Below are positions 1,046 to 56,398 of a stretch of 64,000 bases of DNA, one piece after another. The number at the start of each line of letters is the position of its first letter. Positions within the stretch are counted from its first letter, which is position 1. Source of the DNA: Octopus sinensis (taxonomy: Eukaryota); NCBI RefSeq assembly GCF_006345805.1, contig NC_042997.1, forward strand, positions 53,940,001 to 54,004,000. The letters are read 5' to 3'. Below the pieces are notes generated by a model that was given only the letters and a program-made list of their open reading frames with translations, made no database searches and was not told the origin of the DNA. The position numbers were made by a program, and so were the translations under genes.

Positions 1046-2199
1046 AACATTATATAATCACAACTCAGTCATTCATAGCTTTTAATATAATATATCACTT
1101 TGCACATATGTTCTATTGCTTTATATCATACTAACAAAATTAGACACTCATTCTGTAACCAGTACTGGTTTCAGAGATATTAGGTTGAATTGAACCACTT
1201 GGCATAGGATTTAGAGTTCATATTTGTCGGTAAACATTACACTGTATAATGAATAGGTTTCCAGGGTAGATACTACTTACCAGTTTTTGCATTACTCTGG
1301 ACTAGACATGGAGAAATTTCCCATGTTTATTTTCCTCAAACACTTTTATATGAAAAAATGCAAGCTCAGTCTATATTGAGGTCATCGACATTTGAGACTA
1401 CAGTATCTATATAGTTATAGTATGTATTAATACGGAACATCAAGTATAAATATTAACCAACAAGTAAAAAATGAAGTCACATGAGTCAGTGTTTCGATGT
1501 GTGTTAGTGAATGGCTGTTAAACAGCCGATGTTTTCTTTTTAGTTTTTATTTAGTCGATGTGATTGAATGAGTTAATATGAAGTTGAAGACTTAGGTTGT
1601 ATGAAAAGGGTAAAACGATACACCAAGGAATACTGCACTGAATTAAAATTCTCCGATCAATGTCGTTTGGAGTTGAATTCCATTAATTTAAACTTCCTTA
1701 GACACACAACATGAAAACAACGACTTTCAGCTATACAATGTTTCCTTGCAACACAATGTGTCATGATACTCACTCACTTCCACTACTAAATGTTACAATT
1801 AGCAGACTAGTGGAACCGTATTGCACCCTACCTTAATACTGCACTCTCCTTGATAGAAAAAATTCGTTGTCAGCATCCAGTTCACTTAGTCTTCACGAAC
1901 AAAAAGACAACTGGCATTCCGTCGGTTACGATCAACGGAACAGCCTGCTCGTGAAGTTAACGTGCAAGTGGTTGAGCACTCCACAAACACGTATACCCTT
2001 AACATAGTTCTCGAGAAGATTCAGCGTGACACAGAATGTGACAAGGCTGGTCCTTTGAAATATGTAAGCTGCAATTTACGAACCATATTTTCCTTGTTCT
2101 TTCTCCACCAAATATACCCAATCAAAATCAGGTCGATCTCGAAAAAATATCTGAATACAATCTGATAGGCATTTCACTCTTCATTTTACCAGTGTTGTC

Positions 2200-2950
2200 A
2201 ATCCTGTGGACTTTATATTTCAATATCGACCAAACGCACCACTTTTTAATGCAAACCATACTCTTCCTTCCTATATAAAAAGTCCACACAATGCTGTTTC
2301 TATCTATACAAACTACGAAGCTCTCTTTAATCTTCCTTCATATTTTGTATACAGATTTCATAGCTTTGCAACCCAGTCGCCTTATGCCAGAATTTCTATT
2401 AACAAAACCTTAAACGTGTCATTTAGTAGACACATTATAATCTCTTTCAACATCACTTATACATCATTATTACAACATACCATGGAATCAGTCTTATACC
2501 ATTCAATCTGCCTGCTTTGGTACACATCGCTAAAACCATCAAAGTCACTACAACTACTGATGATCTCCCTTTGTGAGAACATTTACACCTTTGAATTCTT
2601 TATAACATTGTATCTCAAAATACTGTTGAATCAAACTATATCTCAAAAATTGCCCACATACTTGGGACGACTGTATCCCAACCTCCAGAAGATCATCTGA
2701 CTTGGCGGGCAAATATTTACTGACCAACATGCAACCAGGCACCTGCAACTGAGATGGGGTTTCTCGGTCTCATCTAGTACCATTCTCATGGTTCTTGCTC
2801 CTCTGAACTTCAATGTTACATACAAATCCTATCGAATCTACTCGATATTCCTTGTGTTCATTAAAGGGAATTCCAACCACAAAATTACTACACTCTGGTA
2901 TTCCCTCCCTACTCACACTTTTTCTACATATATTAATTTATAGAAGTTAG
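2200..2950 (-). mobile_element. Highly decayed LINE (RTE-like) reverse-transcriptase remnant
   Basis: Broken translation with weak similarity to the FVDxEKAFDRV/VIWWALR region; many stops. Confidence 0.3.
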
Positions 2951-3135
2951 ACATAATCATTATCGTCGCTCCTGCTTTAAGGTCTTCGAGGATTATGGAC
3001 ACTGATCTTCTTCCACGAATTTAATAATTTGAAAAATAAAATAATTTCCTGTTTTATACTTTTCTTTGTTATCAAATTCATTGACTTCTTCAAAACAATT
3101 GAATTAAACATGTCAATCATTCTGTTTATTCTTAG

Positions 3136-3444
<309 letters not shown>

Positions 3445-3569
3445 TGAATATAGTTCGTTGTTTATTTTCGTTGATTTTGGAGCGGATGTTGATAATGAAT
3501 GTGACTTTAAAATTTTCAAAATCGATGTAATATATTCTAATAGAATATTAAACCAATTCAAACTACTAA

Positions 3570-4769
3570 CAGCCACCGACCCTTTCGACGCACGCGTTTG
3601 CCCGCCTTCGCTCGCTCGCTCGCCCGCCGGCAACCGCCGCACAAGCGCTCTTTACGTAGGGTCGTGGCCGAACGGCATAGGTGGAGCTCCTGGAAGGGAT
3701 GTTGTCGGCGCTCCTTTCTGCCAACGGTTAGCTCCCTTATTGCCGGTGCAAGGTCGACTCTACACGGCTGGCGCGTCCTCGAATGTCTGCCGCCGCCGCC
3801 ACACCGCCCGCCTTACAGACGCGCTCCCTCGACGCCCGCGTCTGCCCGCCTCTTCACGCTCGCCGGTTCGTCCTCTCGCAATCGAACCGCTTCTCGTTAC
3901 CGCGTTTTTTTTTTTTTTTTTTTCCCTTCCTTCCGACCCCCGGCCTCGTCTTCGCCGCCGAGGACCCGGTCAGGTTACGCCGCTGACCTCGTGTCGCGTC
4001 GCCGCCGGCGCGGCGGACGGGCTAGCCGTCGCTTCCCGTTCCGCCACAGGCGACGCGGCGTCTCCGAAAGACAGCGGTGCCGTGTCTGTCCCTTCTTCCC
4101 TGGACGGAACCGTGGCTTCAACTCCGGGTTTCGCTGCCTCGTAGCGTTTCTGCAGCTTTTTTTTTTCCCTTCCCGGCATCACCCCGCCTTGGCGCGCGTC
4201 GTTTTCGTGGCGACCACCGTCATGGCACTCGCTCGTTGACCGCAGTCCGGACGCAGTTCGTCGCAGCCGTTTCGAAAGGATCAGGTGGAGGAAGCGACGA
4301 CGACCACCGACGCGTAGGGCGCCGGGCGAGTCTAAAAGCTGCAGCGGGCCCGCGCCAATCTCCGCTGCCCCTCTCGTCTGCCGACCTAGTCGCTGGCCTT
4401 CTTCGCCTTCTCCTCTTCCTCTTCCGCCCGGAACCGGCCCCAACTTCGAATCGACCCGCACCGGAGCCCGTCCGCAGCGGCCCCGGTGTGCGGCAGTCGG
4501 ATCGCAAACCGTTTCTTGTATCGCGAACGCTTCTTCGCGCGTCGACCCGTGTCGTTTTCGCCTCTTCTCCTCCTCCTCCTCCGGGACGAGGAGGAGCTGG
4601 CGCGCGCGTATACGAACGGCGGCCGAACTCGCGAGCGCCCTCGCGCCCCCTGTTTTCGGCCCCTCCGATTCCTTTCGTTCTCGTTTTCCGATCGTCGGCG
4701 GGCGGCTGCTTCCCGAGCTTCCGCCGCCGCCGCCGCGCGCTTCGTTCTCTCGAAACGTAACGTCGGTGA
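3570..4769 (+). other. rDNA 5' external transcribed spacer-like (and possibly promoter-proximal) sequence
   Basis: Abrupt switch to GC/CpG-rich sequence that runs directly into the 18S 5' end at 4770. Confidence 0.8.
3656..3744 (+). repeat. 89-nt direct repeat, copy A (inside the ETS-like leader)
   Basis: 67/90 aligned columns identical to 6948-7036. Confidence 0.9.
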
Positions 4770-6440
4770 TACCTGGTTGATCCTGCCAGTAGTCATATGC
4801 TTGTCTCAAAGCTTAAGCCATGCAAGTGTAAGTTCATGCCGTAAACGAATGGTGAAACCGCGAATGGCTCAGGAACCGGACCTAATCCTCGGGACCGTAT
4901 TCTTCCACCGCGAGGAGAGTGGATAACTGTGGCAATTCTAGAGCTAATACATGCAACCGAAGCCGCGATCGCAGGTCGCACCCGGGCGTCGGGCTCGAAA
5001 ACGGCGTTCGGCAGCCGTCGCGTTTTGCGCGGCGTCGCCGGCGTCCGCTCGGCCGGATCTGGGGCGGCGCATCCGCGCCCGTCCCTCCCGGTCGCGACGA
5101 TACGGTCGGCCTTCCGCATTGGTTGCGGCGCAAATATTAGACTGAGACCGACGCGTACGGGCCGTCGCAGCAGCCGCCGCGCCTTCCGCGCGTGGGTCTT
5201 AGGCGTGCGGCGGCTTCACGCCCTTCGATTTTGGTGACTCTGGATAACTGTCAGTACGATCGCACGGGCTAGTATCGCACTAGCCTTCGCGCGACGGGTC
5301 CCCCGCGAGTCCGCCCTATCAACTGTCGACGGCCCGGTCAGTGCCGACCGTGGTGGCAACGGGTAACGGGGAATCAGGGTTCGATTCCGGAGAGGGAGCA
5401 TGCGAAACGGCTACCACATCCAAGGAAGGCAGCAGGCGCGCAAATTACCCACTCCCGGCACGGGGAGGTAGTGACGAAAAATAACGACGCGGGACTCTGT
5501 CGAGGCCCCGCGATCGGAATGAGTACACTTCAAATCCGTTGACGAGGATCGACCGGAGGGCAAGTCTGGTGCCAGCAGCCGCGGTAATTCCAGCTCCGGT
5601 AGCGTATATTAAAATTGTTGCGTTTGAAAAGCTCGTAGTCGGAATTCGGGTCTCGAAAACGTGCCCCAGCACGTTCGGGGCGACGGCGCCGTCGCAGGCG
5701 CGCTTCTGGCGCGTCCGCTTCGGTCGTCCGTTCGCACTCCCGGCCCTATTCGCCGGTGCGTGCGCGGTCGGGCCGCGGAGCTCTGCTCGCGTCGCCGCCG
5801 CGACTCGGCACCCCGTCCAGCGCTCGTCTTCGCTCGCGTCGCGTCGCGTCCGGTTTCACGCCTGCGCCTTCAACGGCGCGGGTCGGTCAGGCGTGCGCGC
5901 GGGAGCCACGAGGCGGGTGCGCTATTGGGCGTCGTCGCCGTTCGCGTTCTAGCGGTAGTAGCGCGTCCACCTCCCGGTCGTTTCGGCCCGCACGGTTCCT
6001 CCGAGGGTGCTCTTCGCCGAGTGTCCGAGGCGGCCGGTACGTTCACTGTGAAAAAATTAGAGTGCTCAGAGCGATCCCCGCCGGCTTGCATACGAAAAGC
6101 ATGGAATGATGGAAAATGGCCTCGTCCGCGCGTCATCCGTCGGTCTCCGTTCACGACGAGGCAATGATCGAAGGGAGCGATCGGGGCCACTCGTATTGCG
6201 ACGTTAGAGGTGAAATTCTTGGATCGTCGCAAGACGCACTGCAGCGACGGCGTGTGGCAAGCACGTTTTCCTCGATCAAGAGCGAAAGTCGGAGGTTCGA
6301 AGACGATCAGATACCGTCGTAGTTCCGACCGTAAACGATGCCGACTGGCGCTCCGCCGGCGTTCGCTTCGATGACCCGGCGGGGAGCCTGCGCGGGAAAC
6401 CATAGTCGGTTCCGGGGGGAGTATGGTTGCAAAACAGAAG

Positions 6441-6482
<42 letters not shown>

Positions 6483-6923
6483 GCGGCTTAATTTGACTCA
6501 ACACGGGAAAACTCACCCGGTCCGGACACCGGTAGGATTGACAGATCGATAGCTCTTTCTCGATTCGGTGGGTGGTGGTGCATGGCCGTTCTTAGTTGGT
6601 GGAGCGATCCGTCTGGTTGATTCCGATAACGAACGAGACTCCGGCCTGCTAACTAGCGCGTCGATTAGTGCTTTTCCGGTAGGGCGGCGGCGCCGAAGCC
6701 GTCGTCGGTAGCTCCGCGCGCGGCCCGGGCTTGCCGTTGCCGCCGCTCTCCTTCGCGTCCGGCGCTGCGGCCGCGTCCGGCTGCCGTCCCCGTTCGCGGG
6801 GGTTCGGTCGCGGCGTGGTTGCGGCGTCGGTTGCGGAGCGGCGGCGGTGACCCGGTCGGCTCGGCCCGCGCGAGCCCGGCGGCGGCACGCCGTCGCGTCC
6901 GGGCCAGTCGGTTGGCCGTCGCA
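4770..6923 (+). rRNA. 18S rRNA: 18S rRNA, 3'-truncated orphan copy (probable pseudogene), broken within the V7 expansion
   Basis: TACCTGGTTGATCCTGCCAGTAGTCATATGCTTGTCTCAAAG start; conserved blocks GTGCCAGCAGCCGCGGTAATTCCAGCTC, GGAATTGACGGAAGGGCACCACCAGG and GATAACGAACGAGACTC; no 3' domain (no h44/h45). Confidence 0.97.
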
Positions 6924-6947
6924 CCCCAAGGGGGTCCAGACTAATAT

Positions 6948-7036
6948 GTAGGGTTGTGGTTGATCGGCATAGGTTAGCGTCTCGGAGGGATGTCCTCGTA
7001 GCTCCTTTTCTGATGACGGTTAGCTCCCCGTTTGCC
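6948..7036 (+). repeat. 89-nt direct repeat, copy B (right end of the rDNA insert)
   Basis: Shares GTAGGG, CGGCATAGGT, GGGATGT, GCTCCTTT, ACGGTTAGCTCCC and TTGCC with copy A. Confidence 0.9.
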
Positions 7037-8400
7037 CAATTCTACTCCTTATCATGATATATCCATTTAAAGAATTCTCTCTCATTTTTATAAATTGCTT
7101 TGTTTACAACATTTACAGCCGATAATATTTCGAATTTCTAGAATTTAGCTGTATTTTGTCTGTAATATATTAGTGTTTTGGCAAAATAACTTTTGCCCCA
7201 TTTAAATATGCTAACTTTAAATGGAGTATAAACACTCTTTTCTTACTTTTTTTTTATAGTTTCATTTCAAAAAATACCTAAATGTAACTCATCTTCCTTT
7301 TCGACTTGCAACTGCTCGATATTTCTATCTCATTTATTATTCAGCATCGGTGAGCTCACGTTTGGTGCCAAACATCACCGGACAAACAAAATATTGCTTA
7401 AAATTTTATTTATCCCACTTAGTGTGAATATTCATAACGCAAATAAACAATATTGTACAATACTTTTGCAAGGATGTGTCTAGTACATTGCTAGATGTTT
7501 TGTACCTAGGTGTCTCGTTTAATGTGTCTTTTTACACAATCCTAAGCTAACAAGTGATATTTTCCTCATAACTATGGTAGGTTAGTAAAAACTGTCACAT
7601 GTTCTACTAGGCTTGGCCTATGAATATACTATAATGAGACCCCATGGGATCAAAACTTAAGTTCAACGTACGATCGAGATATAAACAAATCAGAATTTTA
7701 AAGTTGACTGGAGATTCGGCGTGTGTTATTCTTGGAGCTACGGTTTATGTGCGCTATGAATCTACTGTATTACCATTTTCAAAACCCGTTCTGAATTCCG
7801 AAACATGCTTAGTCCCAAGAGACTATATATTTGCATTAACATTTTCATCAAACGGCATGTATGTCGTGTTCGTTTATACTATGTTGGGTTTGTTAGCATA
7901 AACTACATGTTCGGTACAACGGATCTTTAGTTTTTAAGATGAAAATAGACCGTTTTTTAAAGTAACATAAGTGTTTAGGTGGTAGTTAATGCATAATACT
8001 CTGAGAAGATATGTGATATTCTTAAATGCAATCACTTATATTGGCGAAATTTATCAACTTTATTTGTTGTAATGTTTCTTTTCTTTAGTAAAAATTACAA
8101 AATTTCATTTTTTTTTTATTGTTTAAGCAAAACCGTAGATTATTTTTAAATTATCGCAATATGTTCCTTCTTAGACTATCTTAAATTATATTTTCGTCAT
8201 TTCTCACGTACTAATAAAACGGAGAGTTTTCAAGCCAAATTTGCTTTTATACTTTAATATTTTATATTTGATTTTTTGTTAACCTATAATTTAAAGTTTC
8301 TTCTCTGGCATTTGGACAAACTTTCTACATAATGACGAGAACGGTATTTTTAATATACATGTTTGAAATATCCGAGATAAACTTTTTCATTGTCATTATA

Positions 8401-8850
<450 letters not shown>

Positions 8851-8882
8851 CTTATTCTCTTATCAAACATTCTTTCTAACAG

Positions 8883-9143
8883 CTGAGAAAGCCTACCACG
8901 AGCAATTGACGGTTCACGAGATTACAAACGCATGCTTTAATACAACTAACCAAATGGTAAAATGTGACTTGCAGCAAGGGAAGTACATGTCATGCTGTAT
9001 GTTGTACAGAGGAGACGTGGCACCAAAAGATGTCAACTCTGCTATCGCAGCCATCAAGACGAGAAATTCAATCCAGTTTGTGGATTGGTGTCCTACCGGC
9101 TTCAAAGTAGGAATAAATAACCAACCCCCAACACTTGTTCCAG
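8883..9143 (+). CDS. TUBA: Alpha-tubulin exon, codons 278-365 ([52 protein letters not shown]...[22 protein letters not shown])
   Basis: ctaacag|CT acceptor, CCAG|gtctgt donor; 261 nt, phase 1-1, in frame with the flanking exons. Confidence 0.97.
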
Positions 9144-9264
9144 GTCTGTATGTTTTAAATTTGATATTAGCCTATCTTAATAATGATAGATGAGGTCAAT
9201 GTAATCGACTTTGCCAGCCTTGTTTCAAAATTTGAATTAATATTTTTTTCTTTTTGTGGTGAAT

Positions 9265-10754: not shown

Positions 10755-11314
10755 TGGAGGCGCATGGCTTAGTGGTTAAGGTGTTGAACTCATGATCGTA
10801 AGGTTGTGGTTTCGATTCCTGGACCGGACGATGCGTTGTGTTCTTGAGCAAAACACTTCATTTCACGTTGCTCCCGTCTACTCAACTGGCAAAAATGAGT
10901 AATCCTGCGACGAACTGGCGTCCCGTCCAGGTGAGGAATCTCTACGCCAATGAAACCGGGAAAACGGCCCTTATGAGCCTGGCATGGCTCGAAAAGGAAC
11001 ATTAGTGGAGGCGCAATGGCCCAGTGGTTTGGGCAGCGGACTCGCTGTCGGAGGATCACGGTTTCGATTCCCAGATCGGGCATTGTGTGTGTTTATTGAG
11101 CGAAGCACCTAAAGCTCCACGAGGCTCCGGCAGGGGGGGGGGGGCGACCCTTGCTTTACTCTTTCGCCCCAACTTTCACTCTTTCTTCCTGTTTCTTGAG
11201 TAACGCTGCGATGGACTGGCGTCCCGTCCAGCTGGGGGGAATACATATGCCACAGAAACCGGGAAACCGGGCCCATGAGCCTGACTAGGCTTGAAAAGGG
11301 CGCATAAAAAAAAA
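10755..11314 (+). mobile_element. Head-to-tail dimer of tRNA-derived SINE family C with poly(A) tail and a single 14-bp TSD
   Basis: Heads TGGAGGCGCATGGCTTAGTGG (10755) and GTGGAGGCGCAATGGCCCAGTGG (about 11005); ATAATGAGAAACTG at 10741-10754 and 11315-11328. Confidence 0.88.
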
Positions 11315-11500
11315 ATAATGAGAAACTGGAGATAAAGTGCTAATGCAAAAGGTGTAAAATTTCGTTATAACAGTCACAAGAAAATATGTGAACGAATGTA
11401 AAGCAGGATTTTTTAAAGTAAATATAATTAAATGTTATACAAGTAAGACAGAAAATTAATCTAAAACAAGATGTAAAAAGATTTAAATCCATGATATAAA

Positions 11501-11837
11501 GACCCCCTTCGGTCATGAATGACCATGGGATTGCACCTAGAAAGTTATCCTCCTAGACACAAGTCCGGGCAAGGTTGTTTATGGAAGGCCAGCAGTCGCC
11601 CATGCATACCAGCCTCCCCTCTCCACGCCACCAGTGTTATCCAAGGGAAAGACAAAGGTCGATACAGCTTGGCACCAGTGACGTCGCAGCTCATTTCTAC
11701 AGCTGAGTGAACTGGAGCAACGTGAAATAAAGTGCCTTGCTCGAGAACACAACACGCAGCCCGGTCCGGGATTCGAGCTCACAACCTCACGATCGTAAGC
11801 TCGACGCTCTAACCACTGAGCCATGCGCCTTCACTTA
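11501..11837 (-). mobile_element. Full-length SINE family C variant with 17-bp TSD
   Basis: Reverse head GGCGCATGGCTCAGTGGTTAGAGC; TAAATCCATGATATAAA at 11484-11500 and 11838-11854. Confidence 0.88.
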
Positions 11838-19289: not shown

Positions 19290-20382
19290 TCGTCAGTGCC
19301 ATACCAACAGACTGTATATGAAAAGAAAGAATAGTGGTAGTGGATTAATTAGTATAGACCATTGTATAAGGAGTGAAAGGAGAACGCTTGCCGAGTATTT
19401 GATAAATAGTGATGAAGACCTGCTGCAATATGCCGCGACAGATATGGATGTAAATGCAGATGAAATGATGGGCAAGGCAGAGTTTAACCAAAGAGCTGAG
19501 GAGAAGAGAAAAGAAGACCTTCCTGAAATGAGAATGCATGGACAGTTTGAAAGGAATACACAAGACATTAAGGATAATACAGCATCGTGGGCATGGCTTC
19601 AGCAAGGTGATTTGAACCATGCCACTAAAAGCTTGATCATTGCTGCACAAGACCAGGCTCTCGCTACTAATTCAGGGAAGTATAATATCTATAAAACTTC
19701 TGACACCCAGAAATGCAGACTCTGTGGAAAGAGTATGGAAAATATGACCCACTTAGTAAGTGAATGTGAGAGCCTTGCACAAAAAGAATACAAACGTCGC
19801 CACGATAAATTGTGTGTTTATCTCCATTGGCTCTTATGTCGTAAATACCAGTATGGAGTAACAGAGAACTGGTATGAGCATGTACCAAGTAAAGTTATGG
19901 AGGAGGGTGGAAAAGTAACGATACTCTGGGACTATGATTTTCAGACGGATCGTTTAATCGAACATCGTCAGCCGGATATTGTCATATGGAATAAGAGAGA
20001 CAAAAACTGTCAGATCATTGATGTAGCCTACCAAATGACATGAATGTTGTGACTAAAGTGGTTGAAAAAATCACCAAGTACTTCGAATTGAAAGTGGAAA
20101 TGGCGAGACTGTATGGAATGCAAGAGGGTAATGTAAAAGTAATACCACTGGTGATCGGAGCTTGGGCTCAATCCCATTGAAACTTCAAGATTTCTTAAGG
20201 CAACTGGAAATTCTATGCAAGATTGATGTCTTGCAAAAAGCAGCCTTATTGGGCACAGCCCACATCTTAAGAAAAGTATTATCTGTCTGAGGTCCTTGTT
20301 GTGACTTGACAGATGAGTAAAGACACCGGTGCATTTTTACCTACACGGTATTACGAAATAATAATGATAATAATAATAATAA

Positions 20383-56324: not shown

Positions 56325-56398
56325 AGGCTCCAAAGGGATTTGAACCCCTGACCTCCAGTTTACAAAACTGGCGCTCTAACCAACTGAGCTATGGAGTC
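56325..56398 (-). tRNA. tRNA-Thr-TGT: tRNA-Thr(UGU), intronic, sense to BRPF; A2-C71 mismatch and U32
   Basis: Cloverleaf GACTCCA / GCTC-GAGC / CCAGT-TTTGTAA-ACTGG / AGGGG-TTCAAAT-CCCTT / TGGAGCC-T. Confidence 0.88.

What the first reader, a model, noticed from the sequence alone, without database searches (positions are those of the whole stretch)
3656..7036. The rDNA insert is bracketed by two diverged 89-nt direct repeats (LTR-like layout)
Seen: 3656-3744 and 6948-7036 are both 89 nt and align at 67/90 columns, with conserved blocks (TAYGTAGGG, CGGCATAGGT, GGGATGT, GCTCCTTT, ACGGTTAGCTCCC, TTGCC) separated by variable patches. Copy B is joined to the broken 18S through a 24-nt linker (CCCCAAGGGGGTCCAGACTAATAT) and homology stops at the return to host intron. 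Copy A can fold with GGCA/TGCC and GGAGCT/AGCTCC stems. A 26% divergence is too high for a duplication made during a recent insertion, so copy B likely came from elsewhere: a spacer-promoter repeat, a second rDNA class, or an independent short mobile family derived from the pre-rRNA leader. TAYGTAGGG resembles the TATATAGGG Pol I start motif known from plants, but I cannot confirm this for molluscs. Speculative: a leader-derived structured RNA or non-autonomous element that mobilises rDNA.
Basis: partly seen in the sequence, partly recalled or inferred. Interest (0 to 1): 0.75.

Follow-up and report, generated by a model that had tools for sequence, protein, structure and literature searches.

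The report
Permuted rDNA insert, not an LTR
The two short repeats are old copies of a repeat found near the start of the normal octopus ribosomal RNA precursor; they flank the insert only because a recently inserted piece of rDNA carries its front end at the back, so this is not a mobile element or a structured RNA.

Summary
The repeats are real: 3653-3744 and 6945-7036 are 76% identical (E about 1e-12). They are not LTR-like. The window is Octopus sinensis, intron of an alpha-tubulin gene. O. vulgaris (flanks 99.6-99.8% identical) and O. bimaculoides have an empty site with 38 bp in place of the 3459-bp insert (3579-7037). The insertion is therefore very recent, with a 38-bp target deletion, no target-site duplication and no poly(A).

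rDNA contigs of a close Octopus relative carry both copies in one normal unit, same orientation, about 450 nt apart. Copy B, together with the supposed "24-nt linker", lies at the very 5' end. Copy A lies downstream in the external transcribed spacer. Their homology runs about 205-215 nt, not 89. A more distant octopod has only the copy-B position.

The insert is a circular permutation of one rDNA stretch: [spacer +~390 to 18S nt 2176] followed by [leader +~3 to +~123].

There is no Rfam hit, no folding signal, no covariation and no dispersed copies.

Favoured mechanism (about 0.5): cDNA of pre-rRNA, with a reverse-transcriptase template jump at the RNA's 5' end, captured at a double-strand break. 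Main rival (about 0.3): re-integration of a circular rDNA fragment.

The parts
3579..7037 (+). Whole rDNA-derived insert (3459 bp) in an intron of the alpha-tubulin-8-like gene of Octopus sinensis. It is absent from O. vulgaris and O. bimaculoides, which have 38 bp here instead.
3576..3578 (+). Left junction: CCG is shared by the host (empty-site sequence ...GCCACCG) and the rDNA (...CGCCCG|ACCC), giving 3-nt microhomology.
3579..6916 (+). Fragment 1: a contiguous copy of rDNA from about 390 nt into the 5' external spacer to 18S nt 2176, in the V7 expansion. It matches L089 408-3801. It comprises the spacer (3579-4769) and the first 2147 nt of 18S (4770-6916).
3653..3744 (+). The full A unit is 3653-3855.
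3653..3855 (+). Full A unit of the roughly 205-215-nt spacer subrepeat, orthologous to L089 499-700.
6916..6917 (+). Internal junction: 18S V7 (...GGTTGGC) is joined to the spacer leader (CCGTCGCACCCC...). There is 1 nt of perfect microhomology (C) and imperfect TG[G/A]C.
6917..7036 (+). Fragment 2: the native 5' leader of the rDNA spacer, matching L089 20-139. It contains the supposed 'linker' (6917-6944) and copy B (6945-7036). In the source it lies UPSTREAM of fragment 1.
6945..7036 (+). Copy B: the first 92 nt of the leader-proximal subrepeat unit, truncated by the end of the insert.
7037..7037 (+). Right junction: one C that matches neither the rDNA (G) nor the empty site (A). There is no microhomology.
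3136..3438 (+). Upstream tubulin exon bordering the intron that received the insert.
8885..9145 (+). Downstream tubulin exon of the same intron.

Best explanation
Shown (about 0.9 confidence). Copies A and B are two paralogous copies of a roughly 205-215-nt subrepeat that lie about 450 nt apart, in the same orientation, near the 5' end of the spacer upstream of 18S in normal Octopus rDNA. Copy B is the ancestral, leader-proximal copy. Copy A is a lineage-specific downstream duplicate.

They flank the insert only because the insert is a two-piece, circularly permuted copy of one rDNA stretch. Spacer +~390 to 18S nt 2176 comes first. The leader (+~3 to +~123), which lies upstream in the source, is attached behind it.

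The piece entered a tubulin intron of O. sinensis after the split from O. vulgaris, at a broken site that lost 38 bp. The joints look like end-joining (3, 1 and 0 nt microhomology, and one filler base).

Inferred (about 0.5 confidence). The permutation arose on RNA. A reverse transcriptase, probably from a LINE, started on a pre-rRNA about 125-130 nt from its 5' end and ran to within a few nt of that 5' end. It then jumped to the V7 region of 18S on the same or another unprocessed pre-rRNA and copied back to about +390. The resulting cDNA was captured during double-strand-break repair, an endonuclease-independent event, hence no poly(A) and no target-site duplication.
For: Identity of the locus and empty sites.

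Both copies and the 'linker' lie in one normal rDNA contig in three independent Logan assemblies. L089 16-139 matches window 6913-7036 at 97.6%. L089 405-3801 matches window 3576-6916 at 96%. The 18S core is about 100% identical, and L089 holds a complete 18S.

The A/B homology extends to about 205-215 nt with a spacing of about 450 nt. A more distant octopod DNA scaffold (L101) has only the B-position copy.

Junction anatomy.

For the RNA route:
- Fragment 2 starts at L089 19/20, at most 19 nt from the 5' end of every Logan contig.
- Three contigs from two run series all begin within 9 nt of each other at (AGTCACGCC)TCTAGGTGACC, whereas the DNA scaffold L101 continues 587 nt further upstream.
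- That point carries an initiator-like motif, GCTT[C/A]TAG(G)TGAC, repeated three times in the L101 spacer, as spacer promoters are.
- Everything in the insert lies downstream of that point.
- LINEs are expressed and apparently active in octopus (PMC9115989).
- rRNA fragments are known partners in LINE-mediated chimeric insertions made by template switching (bioRxiv 10.1101/2025.02.02.635956).
- A reverse-transcriptase-associated zinc-finger ORF remnant lies in the window, which is only weak support.
Against: The library type of the Logan runs (RNA or DNA) could not be checked, so the transcription start is inferred and not mapped.

The jump is 2-10 nt short of the inferred 5' end.

No primer or microhomology explains the start of cDNA synthesis at about +125-130; the right junction has a filler C.

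A 3.3-kb, 65% G+C, highly structured nucleolar precursor is a demanding and unusual template.

The two outer ends of the insert are only 265-268 nt apart in the source (L089 139 and 405/408). That is natural for a circle opened once and about a 7% coincidence on the RNA model.

The reference contigs are from a relative, not from O. sinensis itself (spacer about 92-93% identical).
Confidence: 0.5

Rival explanations
1. Circular DNA intermediate. A roughly 3.8-kb rDNA fragment (leader +~3 to 18S nt 2176) was excised and circularised by end joining, which made the 18S-V7|leader junction. The circle was later opened between leader +~123 and +~390, losing about 265 bp, and was captured at a double-strand break in the tubulin intron.
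For: The insert is an exact circular permutation of one contiguous source stretch. It is shorter than that stretch (3459 against about 3783 nt), and its two outer ends are only 265-268 nt apart in the source. All three joints look like end joining of DNA ends, with 0-3 nt microhomology, one filler base and a 38-bp target deletion. From established knowledge: rDNA is a prominent source of extrachromosomal circles, and permuted order is the classical signature of translocation through a circle (the cattle KIT colour-sidedness case).
Against: It leaves unexplained why one circle breakpoint falls within about 20 nt of the point where all RNA-like contigs begin and where an initiator-like motif sits. 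That is roughly a 0.1-2% coincidence for a random break. It also leaves unexplained why no non-transcribed spacer is included.
Confidence: 0.28
2. Copy of a pre-existing rearranged rDNA unit, or two independent rDNA fragments. Either a deletion in the array had already joined 18S V7 of one unit to the leader of the next and a single DNA stretch was copied from there, or two unrelated rDNA fragments were ligated at the break.
For: The same junction anatomy fits. Truncated units occur at the edges of rDNA arrays (general knowledge).
Against: Two random fragments of a multi-kb unit would rarely be neighbours 265 nt apart in the source. A fragment copied from a rearranged array has no reason to be just under one 'period' long. 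Neither idea explains the boundary at the putative start site.
Confidence: 0.1
3. Assembly artefact. The insert was introduced by a chimeric long read or a polishing error in GCA_006345805.1 and does not exist in the animal.
For: It is seen in a single assembly only, and rDNA is a frequent source of misassembly.
Against: The host sequence continues correctly on both sides, with a precise 38-bp loss and microhomology at the joints. A chimeric read would give one junction, not an insertion with two host junctions 38 bp apart.
Confidence: 0.05
4. One reading: an LTR-like or non-autonomous mobile element, or a leader-derived structured RNA or ribozyme, that mobilises rDNA.
For: Two direct repeats lie near the ends of the insert. 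A purine run, AAGGGGG, lies before copy B.
Against: - No target-site duplication; a 38-bp deletion instead.
- Repeats are 76% identical in an insertion younger than a 99.7%-identical species pair.
- Both repeats and the AAGGGGG run are native neighbours in normal rDNA.
- No other copies in about 230 kb.
- 82 metagenome pattern hits were all chance matches.
- No Rfam family.
- Folding z-scores between -1.2 and +0.7.
- No covariation.
Confidence: 0.02

Closest known systems
Subrepeats and duplicated leader or promoter-proximal segments in rDNA spacers (for example the spacer-promoter repeats of Xenopus and Drosophila; from established knowledge)
   Same: Diverged direct copies of the sequence next to the transcription start lie inside one rDNA unit and evolve with the unit. 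In the more distant octopod scaffold the initiator-like motif itself is repeated three times upstream.
   Different: Here the duplicated segment lies downstream of the inferred start, so it is transcribed leader rather than upstream promoter. There are only two copies, and the second is lineage-specific.
rDNA orphons and rRNA pseudogenes dispersed outside the arrays
   Same: A solitary, truncated rDNA piece lies in a protein-gene intron, far from a complete unit.
   Different: The piece is permuted (two segments out of order), includes the external spacer, and can be dated to after the O. sinensis/O. vulgaris split.
Chimeric retrocopies made by LINE reverse-transcriptase template switching (U6/L1, 5S/L1, 28S/L1), and endonuclease-independent LINE-type insertion at double-strand breaks
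   Same: The 3' piece ends at, or within a few nt of, the 5' end of its RNA, followed by a jump to a second template in the same orientation. There is a target-site deletion, no target-site duplication and no poly(A), as in endonuclease-independent events.
   Different: No LINE sequence is present in the insert. Both templates are pre-rRNA. The cDNA start has no visible primer homology. The RNA origin is inferred, not shown.
Translocation through circular DNA intermediates and re-integration of extrachromosomal circular DNA (cattle KIT colour-sidedness; rDNA circles)
   Same: Circular permutation of a contiguous donor segment, with end-joining junctions.
   Different: The donor is a small (about 3.8 kb) sub-unit fragment of rDNA with one breakpoint at the putative transcription start. 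No circle has been observed.
LTR retrotransposons and retrozymes
   Same: Only the superficial layout: direct repeats near both ends of an insert.
   Different: Every defining feature tested fails; see the membership test.

Membership tests
LTR-type retroelement (including retrozyme-like non-autonomous elements) | Target-site duplication flanking the element | tested here: not met
   The empty sites in O. vulgaris and O. bimaculoides show a 38-bp deletion of target DNA and no duplication.
LTR-type retroelement (including retrozyme-like non-autonomous elements) | The two LTRs are identical at insertion and diverge only with age | tested here: not met
   The repeats are 76% identical, although the flanks are 99.6-99.8% identical to the species that lacks the insert.
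LTR-type retroelement (including retrozyme-like non-autonomous elements) | The repeats are terminal and are created by the replication cycle, not pre-existing neighbours in the donor | tested here: not met
   The left repeat lies 74 nt inside the insert. Both repeats lie about 450 nt apart in normal rDNA contigs.
LTR-type retroelement (including retrozyme-like non-autonomous elements) | Self-cleaving ribozyme (retrozyme) or primer-binding and polypurine signals | tested here: not met
   No hammerhead, HDV-like or other Rfam family matches even at E<=10. The AAGGGGG run before copy B is native, conserved leader sequence.
SINE-like or short dispersed mobile family | Many dispersed copies outside rDNA | tested here: not met
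   A profile search of the window and L001-L003 (about 230 kb of distinct octopus sequence) finds only the two copies in the insert. Whole genomes could not be searched.
SINE-like or short dispersed mobile family | Descent from a tRNA, 5S or 7SL RNA, with an internal Pol III promoter | tested here: not met
   ARAGORN and Rfam find nothing in the copies.
Conserved structured RNA | Folding energy better than shuffled sequence | tested here: not met
   z = -0.31 and +0.70 for the sense strands, -1.18 and -0.49 for the antisense strands, and +0.67 for the 260-nt leader.
Conserved structured RNA | Compensatory base changes supporting the helices | tested here: not met
   0 of 20 pairs with 2 sequences, and 1 of 27 pairs with 5 sequences. 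The covariation term is +0.4, and several pairs are broken. With only 5 sequences the power is low.
rDNA spacer subrepeat | Both copies present in normal rDNA units of independent samples, in fixed order and orientation upstream of 18S | tested here: met
   L086/L089, L087/L102 and L088: B at 48-139 and A at 497-588 of L089, with a complete 18S at 1626-4270.
rDNA spacer subrepeat | The homology is part of a longer repeat unit with regular spacing | tested here: met
   About 205-215 nt of homology at a spacing of 449-456 nt.
Pol I transcription start at TAYGTAGGG | The transcript begins at the motif | tested here: inconclusive
   Contigs extend 38-47 nt upstream of the motif and all stop at an initiator-like TCTAGGTGACC. 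This argues against the motif being the start, but the library type is unknown and no 5' end was mapped.
Chimeric retrocopy by reverse-transcriptase template switching | The 5' boundary of the 3' piece coincides with the 5' end of the donor RNA | tested here: inconclusive
   The boundary is at L089 19/20, at most 19 nt from all the contig 5' ends. The true start is inferred only.
Chimeric retrocopy by reverse-transcriptase template switching | Poly(A) tail, target-site duplication and an endonuclease target site (canonical target-primed reverse transcription) | tested here: not met
   None is present. Only the endonuclease-independent, break-repair variety would fit.
Re-integrated circular DNA | The insert is a circular permutation of a contiguous donor and is no longer than the donor | tested here: met
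   [L089 408-3801] + [20-139]: 3459 nt against about 3783 nt.
Re-integrated circular DNA | The circle, or its junction, is detectable in extrachromosomal DNA | not testable with these tools
   This needs Circle-seq data or raw reads.

The most novel reading that the evidence does not exclude
A germline insertion in Octopus sinensis made from cDNA of the unprocessed ribosomal RNA precursor. A reverse transcriptase ran off the 5' end of the pre-rRNA, jumped back into 18S, and the product patched a chromosome break. If so, the internal junction marks the Pol I start site to within a few nucleotides. It would also show that nucleolar precursor RNA is accessible to retroelement enzymes in a cephalopod germline.
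Probability: 0.45. Interest if true: 0.5.

Novelty: new member of a known kind. Interest (0 to 1): 0.3.

Why it matters
It removes a tempting but wrong reading (an LTR-like element or ribozyme that moves rDNA) and replaces it with a documented anatomy.

It dates a 3.5-kb rDNA-derived insertion to after the O. sinensis/O. vulgaris split, giving a clean presence/absence marker between these two very close species.

It gives a first outline of the 5' spacer of octopus rDNA: a probable start region, a conserved leader, a lineage-specific leader duplication, and a 2645-nt 18S with large expansions.

The permuted order is a natural experiment that separates two repair routes, RNA-templated and circle-mediated, and it can be settled with existing reads.

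For annotation, it warns that the 18S hit in this intron is a dead fragment and not an rRNA gene.

Tried and rejected
- Rfam at permissive thresholds on both copies and on the whole reference spacer gave nothing.
- I looked by eye for hammerhead (copy B has CTGATGA) and HDV-like folds. No GAAA box or matching stems were present, and copy A lacks CTGATGA.
- Single-sequence and alignment folding gave no signal.
- I looked for a target-site duplication (CCAATTC... on both sides). The empty sites show that this is ordinary host sequence.
- A metagenome scan for CTGNNNACGGTTAGCTCCC gave 82 loci, all chance matches; none aligns beyond the seed.
- A protein search with the wrong reading frame of the spacer (3598-4236) found nothing.
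- Exact look-ups of five window ORFs were not on record. The shared 68-aa 18S ORF did work.
- I tried to establish that the Logan runs are RNA-seq, through the tubulin mRNA contigs and through a literature search for the run numbers. Neither helped.
- Literature searches for an octopus rDNA spacer description returned nothing relevant.
- The bacterial-type promoter and terminator scan is irrelevant here.
- The idea that the insert carries a second, divergent rDNA class is rejected. Its 18S core is about 100% identical to an rDNA contig that holds a complete 18S.
Full report
**The observation.** The sequence shows two direct repeats. MAFFT aligns 3653-3744 with 6945-7036, starting at TA[C/T]GTAGGG and ending at TTGCC. 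blastn gives 76.3% identity over 93 columns, with E=1.7e-12 inside the insert, where it is the only strong repeat. A 27-nt degenerate pattern hits only these two places in 64 kb, against 0 expected. The repeats are therefore real and not due to chance. Rfam confirms that a 5' part of a eukaryotic 18S lies between them (4773-6414 and 6527-6738, model positions 4-1474).

**Where the window comes from, and the empty site.** tblastn with a generic alpha-tubulin shows that the insert sits in an intron between exons at 3136-3438 and 8885-9145. A protein search with the joined exons finds tubulin alpha-8-like proteins of Octopus bimaculoides, O. sinensis, O. vulgaris and Argonauta hians. I fetched the first three genes.
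- The window is 100% identical to the O. sinensis chromosome (GCA_006345805.1).
- O. vulgaris matches 2500-3578 at 99.8% and 7038-8380 at 99.6%.
- O. bimaculoides matches the same flanks at 95% and 85%.
- Both of these species have only 38 bp (TTGACGAAAATCATAGTGTGCCTAATTAATAAAATCAA in O. vulgaris) where O. sinensis has 3459 bp.

The insert is therefore 3579-7037. It is younger than the O. sinensis/O. vulgaris split. It replaced 38 bp of target, and it has no target-site duplication and no poly(A). Because the insertion is so recent, the 24% difference between the two repeats cannot be decay after insertion. Both repeats must be near-exact copies of different source sequences.

**Finding the source.** An exhaustive phmmer search with a spurious ORF of the spacer (3973-4809, minus strand) found one related ORF, P0124 (E=1e-42). 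Its contigs are rDNA of a close Octopus relative, assembled from public runs: L086 (the same contig as L089 in rRNA sense, 4347 nt), L087/L102 and, through a second ORF, L088. L089 carries a complete 18S (Rfam model 1-1831, 2645 nt) preceded by 1625 nt and followed by 77 nt of ITS1. Against this reference:
- The 18S core of the insert is about 100% identical.
- The 18S expansions are 92-99% identical.
- The spacer is about 92-93% identical.

The insert therefore derives from ordinary rDNA and not from a divergent class.

**The key result.**
- Window 3576-6916 matches L089 405-3801 (96%).
- Window 6913-7036, which is the supposed linker plus copy B, matches L089 16-139 (97.6%). That is the very beginning of the contig, upstream of the first segment.

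In the normal unit, copy B is at 48-139 and copy A at 497-588. They have the same orientation and lie about 450 nt apart. Their homology continues for about 205-215 nt, down to ...GACGCCCGCGTYTGCCCGCC. The '89-nt unit' is thus the first part of a longer spacer subrepeat. The 'linker' is native leader sequence. Homology 'stops at the host' only because the insert ends there.

A DNA scaffold from a more distant octopod (L101) has a single copy, at the position of copy B, directly after a conserved block (L101 588-651 matches L089 7-70 at 86%). Copy B is therefore the ancestral leader copy, and copy A is a later duplicate within the Octopus lineage. Between O. sinensis and the reference, fragment 2 differs at 3 of 124 positions, whereas copy A differs at 7 of 92 and the rest of the spacer at about 7%. 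This hints at constraint on the leader, but the numbers are small.

**Anatomy of the insert.** It is a circular permutation of one source stretch: [L089 408-3801] followed by [L089 20-139]. L089 140-404/407 is missing, and nothing upstream of L089 19 is present.
- Left joint: host ...GCCACCG and rDNA ...CGCCCG|ACCC share CCG.
- Internal joint: 18S ...GGTTGGC|GAACG and leader ...GGTGAC|CGTCGC share one C, with imperfect TG[G/A]C.
- Right joint: one C that matches neither partner.

These are end-joining-type joints at a break that lost 38 bp.

- *LTR-like element.* Every defining feature fails: no target-site duplication, non-identical repeats in a very young insertion, and repeats that are native neighbours in the donor.
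- *Mobile family.* There are no further copies in the window or in about 170 kb of additional octopus sequence, using pattern, blastn and profile searches. A scan of 241 million metagenome records with a 16-base pattern gave only chance matches. Whole octopus genomes could not be searched.
- *Structured RNA or ribozyme.* There are no Rfam matches even at E<=10. Folding energies are indistinguishable from shuffles (z from -1.2 to +0.7). RNAalifold on five distinct copies gives a positive (unfavourable) covariation term, one compensatory pair of 27 and several broken pairs.
- *TAYGTAGGG as the Pol I start.* The contigs extend 38-47 nt upstream of it. Three contigs from two run series begin within 9 nt of one another at (AGTCACGCC)TCTAGGTGACC. 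The DNA scaffold L101 continues 587 nt further and carries the motif GCTT[C/A]TAG(G)TGAC three times (positions 54, 273, 589); only the last is followed by the conserved leader. This looks like a gene promoter preceded by spacer-promoter-like repeats. The start is therefore probably about 40 nt upstream of TATGTAGGG. This is an inference: I could not establish that the runs are RNA-seq.

**Mechanism.** Two routes give a permuted copy.

(a) *RNA route.* A reverse transcriptase begins on pre-rRNA at about +125-130 and reaches the 5' end. It jumps into 18S V7 of the same or another unprocessed precursor and copies back to about +390. The cDNA is then captured at a break.

(b) *DNA route.* A roughly 3.8-kb rDNA fragment is circularised, which makes the internal joint. 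It is opened again with a loss of about 265 bp and is then captured.

Route (a) explains why the upstream boundary of fragment 2 lies within a few to 19 nt of the inferred transcript start, and why nothing upstream of that start is present. For a random DNA break that coincidence is of the order of 0.1-2%. Route (b) explains why the two outer ends are only 265-268 nt apart in the source, which is about a 7% coincidence under (a), and why all the joints look like plain end joining. Allowing about 70% confidence in the start-site inference, I put (a) at about 0.5 and (b) at about 0.3.

Supporting context for (a): LINEs are expressed and apparently active in octopus (PMC9115989), and rRNA pieces are known partners in LINE-mediated chimeric insertions ascribed to template switching (bioRxiv 10.1101/2025.02.02.635956). 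The lack of poly(A) and of a target-site duplication fits only the endonuclease-independent, break-repair variety (established knowledge of such L1 events). Whether +390 is itself an RNA end, such as an early processing site, is speculation.

**Comparison with what is known, and verdict.** The repeats belong to the well-known class of rDNA spacer subrepeats. The insert is an rDNA orphon or rRNA pseudogene with an unusual permuted structure, matching either chimeric retrocopy formation or circle-mediated translocation, both of which are known. It is a new member of known kinds. It is mildly interesting as a datable, mechanistically informative event and as a pointer to the octopus Pol I start. 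It is not a new element or RNA.

Noticed in passing
L089 1626-4270; window 4770-6916: Octopus 18S rRNA is 2645 nt long, with large G+C-rich expansions in V2, V4 and V7. Rfam splits the truncated window copy into two hits, although it is collinear with the complete gene.
   Followed up: partly
L101 1-600: The spacer of a more distant octopod carries the initiator-like motif GCTT[C/A]TAG(G)TGAC three times (54, 273, 589) and a 42-nt element twice (5-46 and 487-528, 86% identical). The layout resembles spacer promoters upstream of the gene promoter.
   Followed up: partly
L089 795-925 = L101 1169-1299 = window 3953-4092: A roughly 130-nt block in the middle of the external spacer is 89-91% conserved between distant octopods, while most of the spacer cannot be aligned. 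It is a candidate processing or U3-binding site.
   Followed up: no
L089 232-480: Between the two subrepeat units lies a run of short CGCC(T)TCGCCCGCC-type repeats and three copies of a roughly 25-nt motif, CGCCCGCCTTTCAGACGCTGCGTTC.
   Followed up: no
window 8325-8870: A long TA/TACA-type microsatellite tract lies in the same tubulin intron, just upstream of the next exon. Similar tracts are scattered through the window.
   Followed up: no
window 19318-20043 (+): A 241-aa ORF with a weak match to the zinc-binding region of reverse transcriptases (PF13966, E=5.6e-4, below the Pfam cut-off). It is probably the tail of a non-LTR retrotransposon inside the 20-kb tubulin intron.
   Followed up: partly
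window 56325-56398 (-): A tRNA-Thr (TGT) gene, or a tRNA-derived repeat, found by both Rfam and ARAGORN.
   Followed up: no
window 10790-11824: ORF translations such as AQWLERRAYDREVVSSNPG suggest tRNA-derived SINE copies on both strands.
   Followed up: no
window 109-31907: The tubulin alpha-8-like gene has very long introns: its last five exons span more than 31 kb, and the whole gene about 70 kb in L001. The gene starts upstream of the window.
   Followed up: partly
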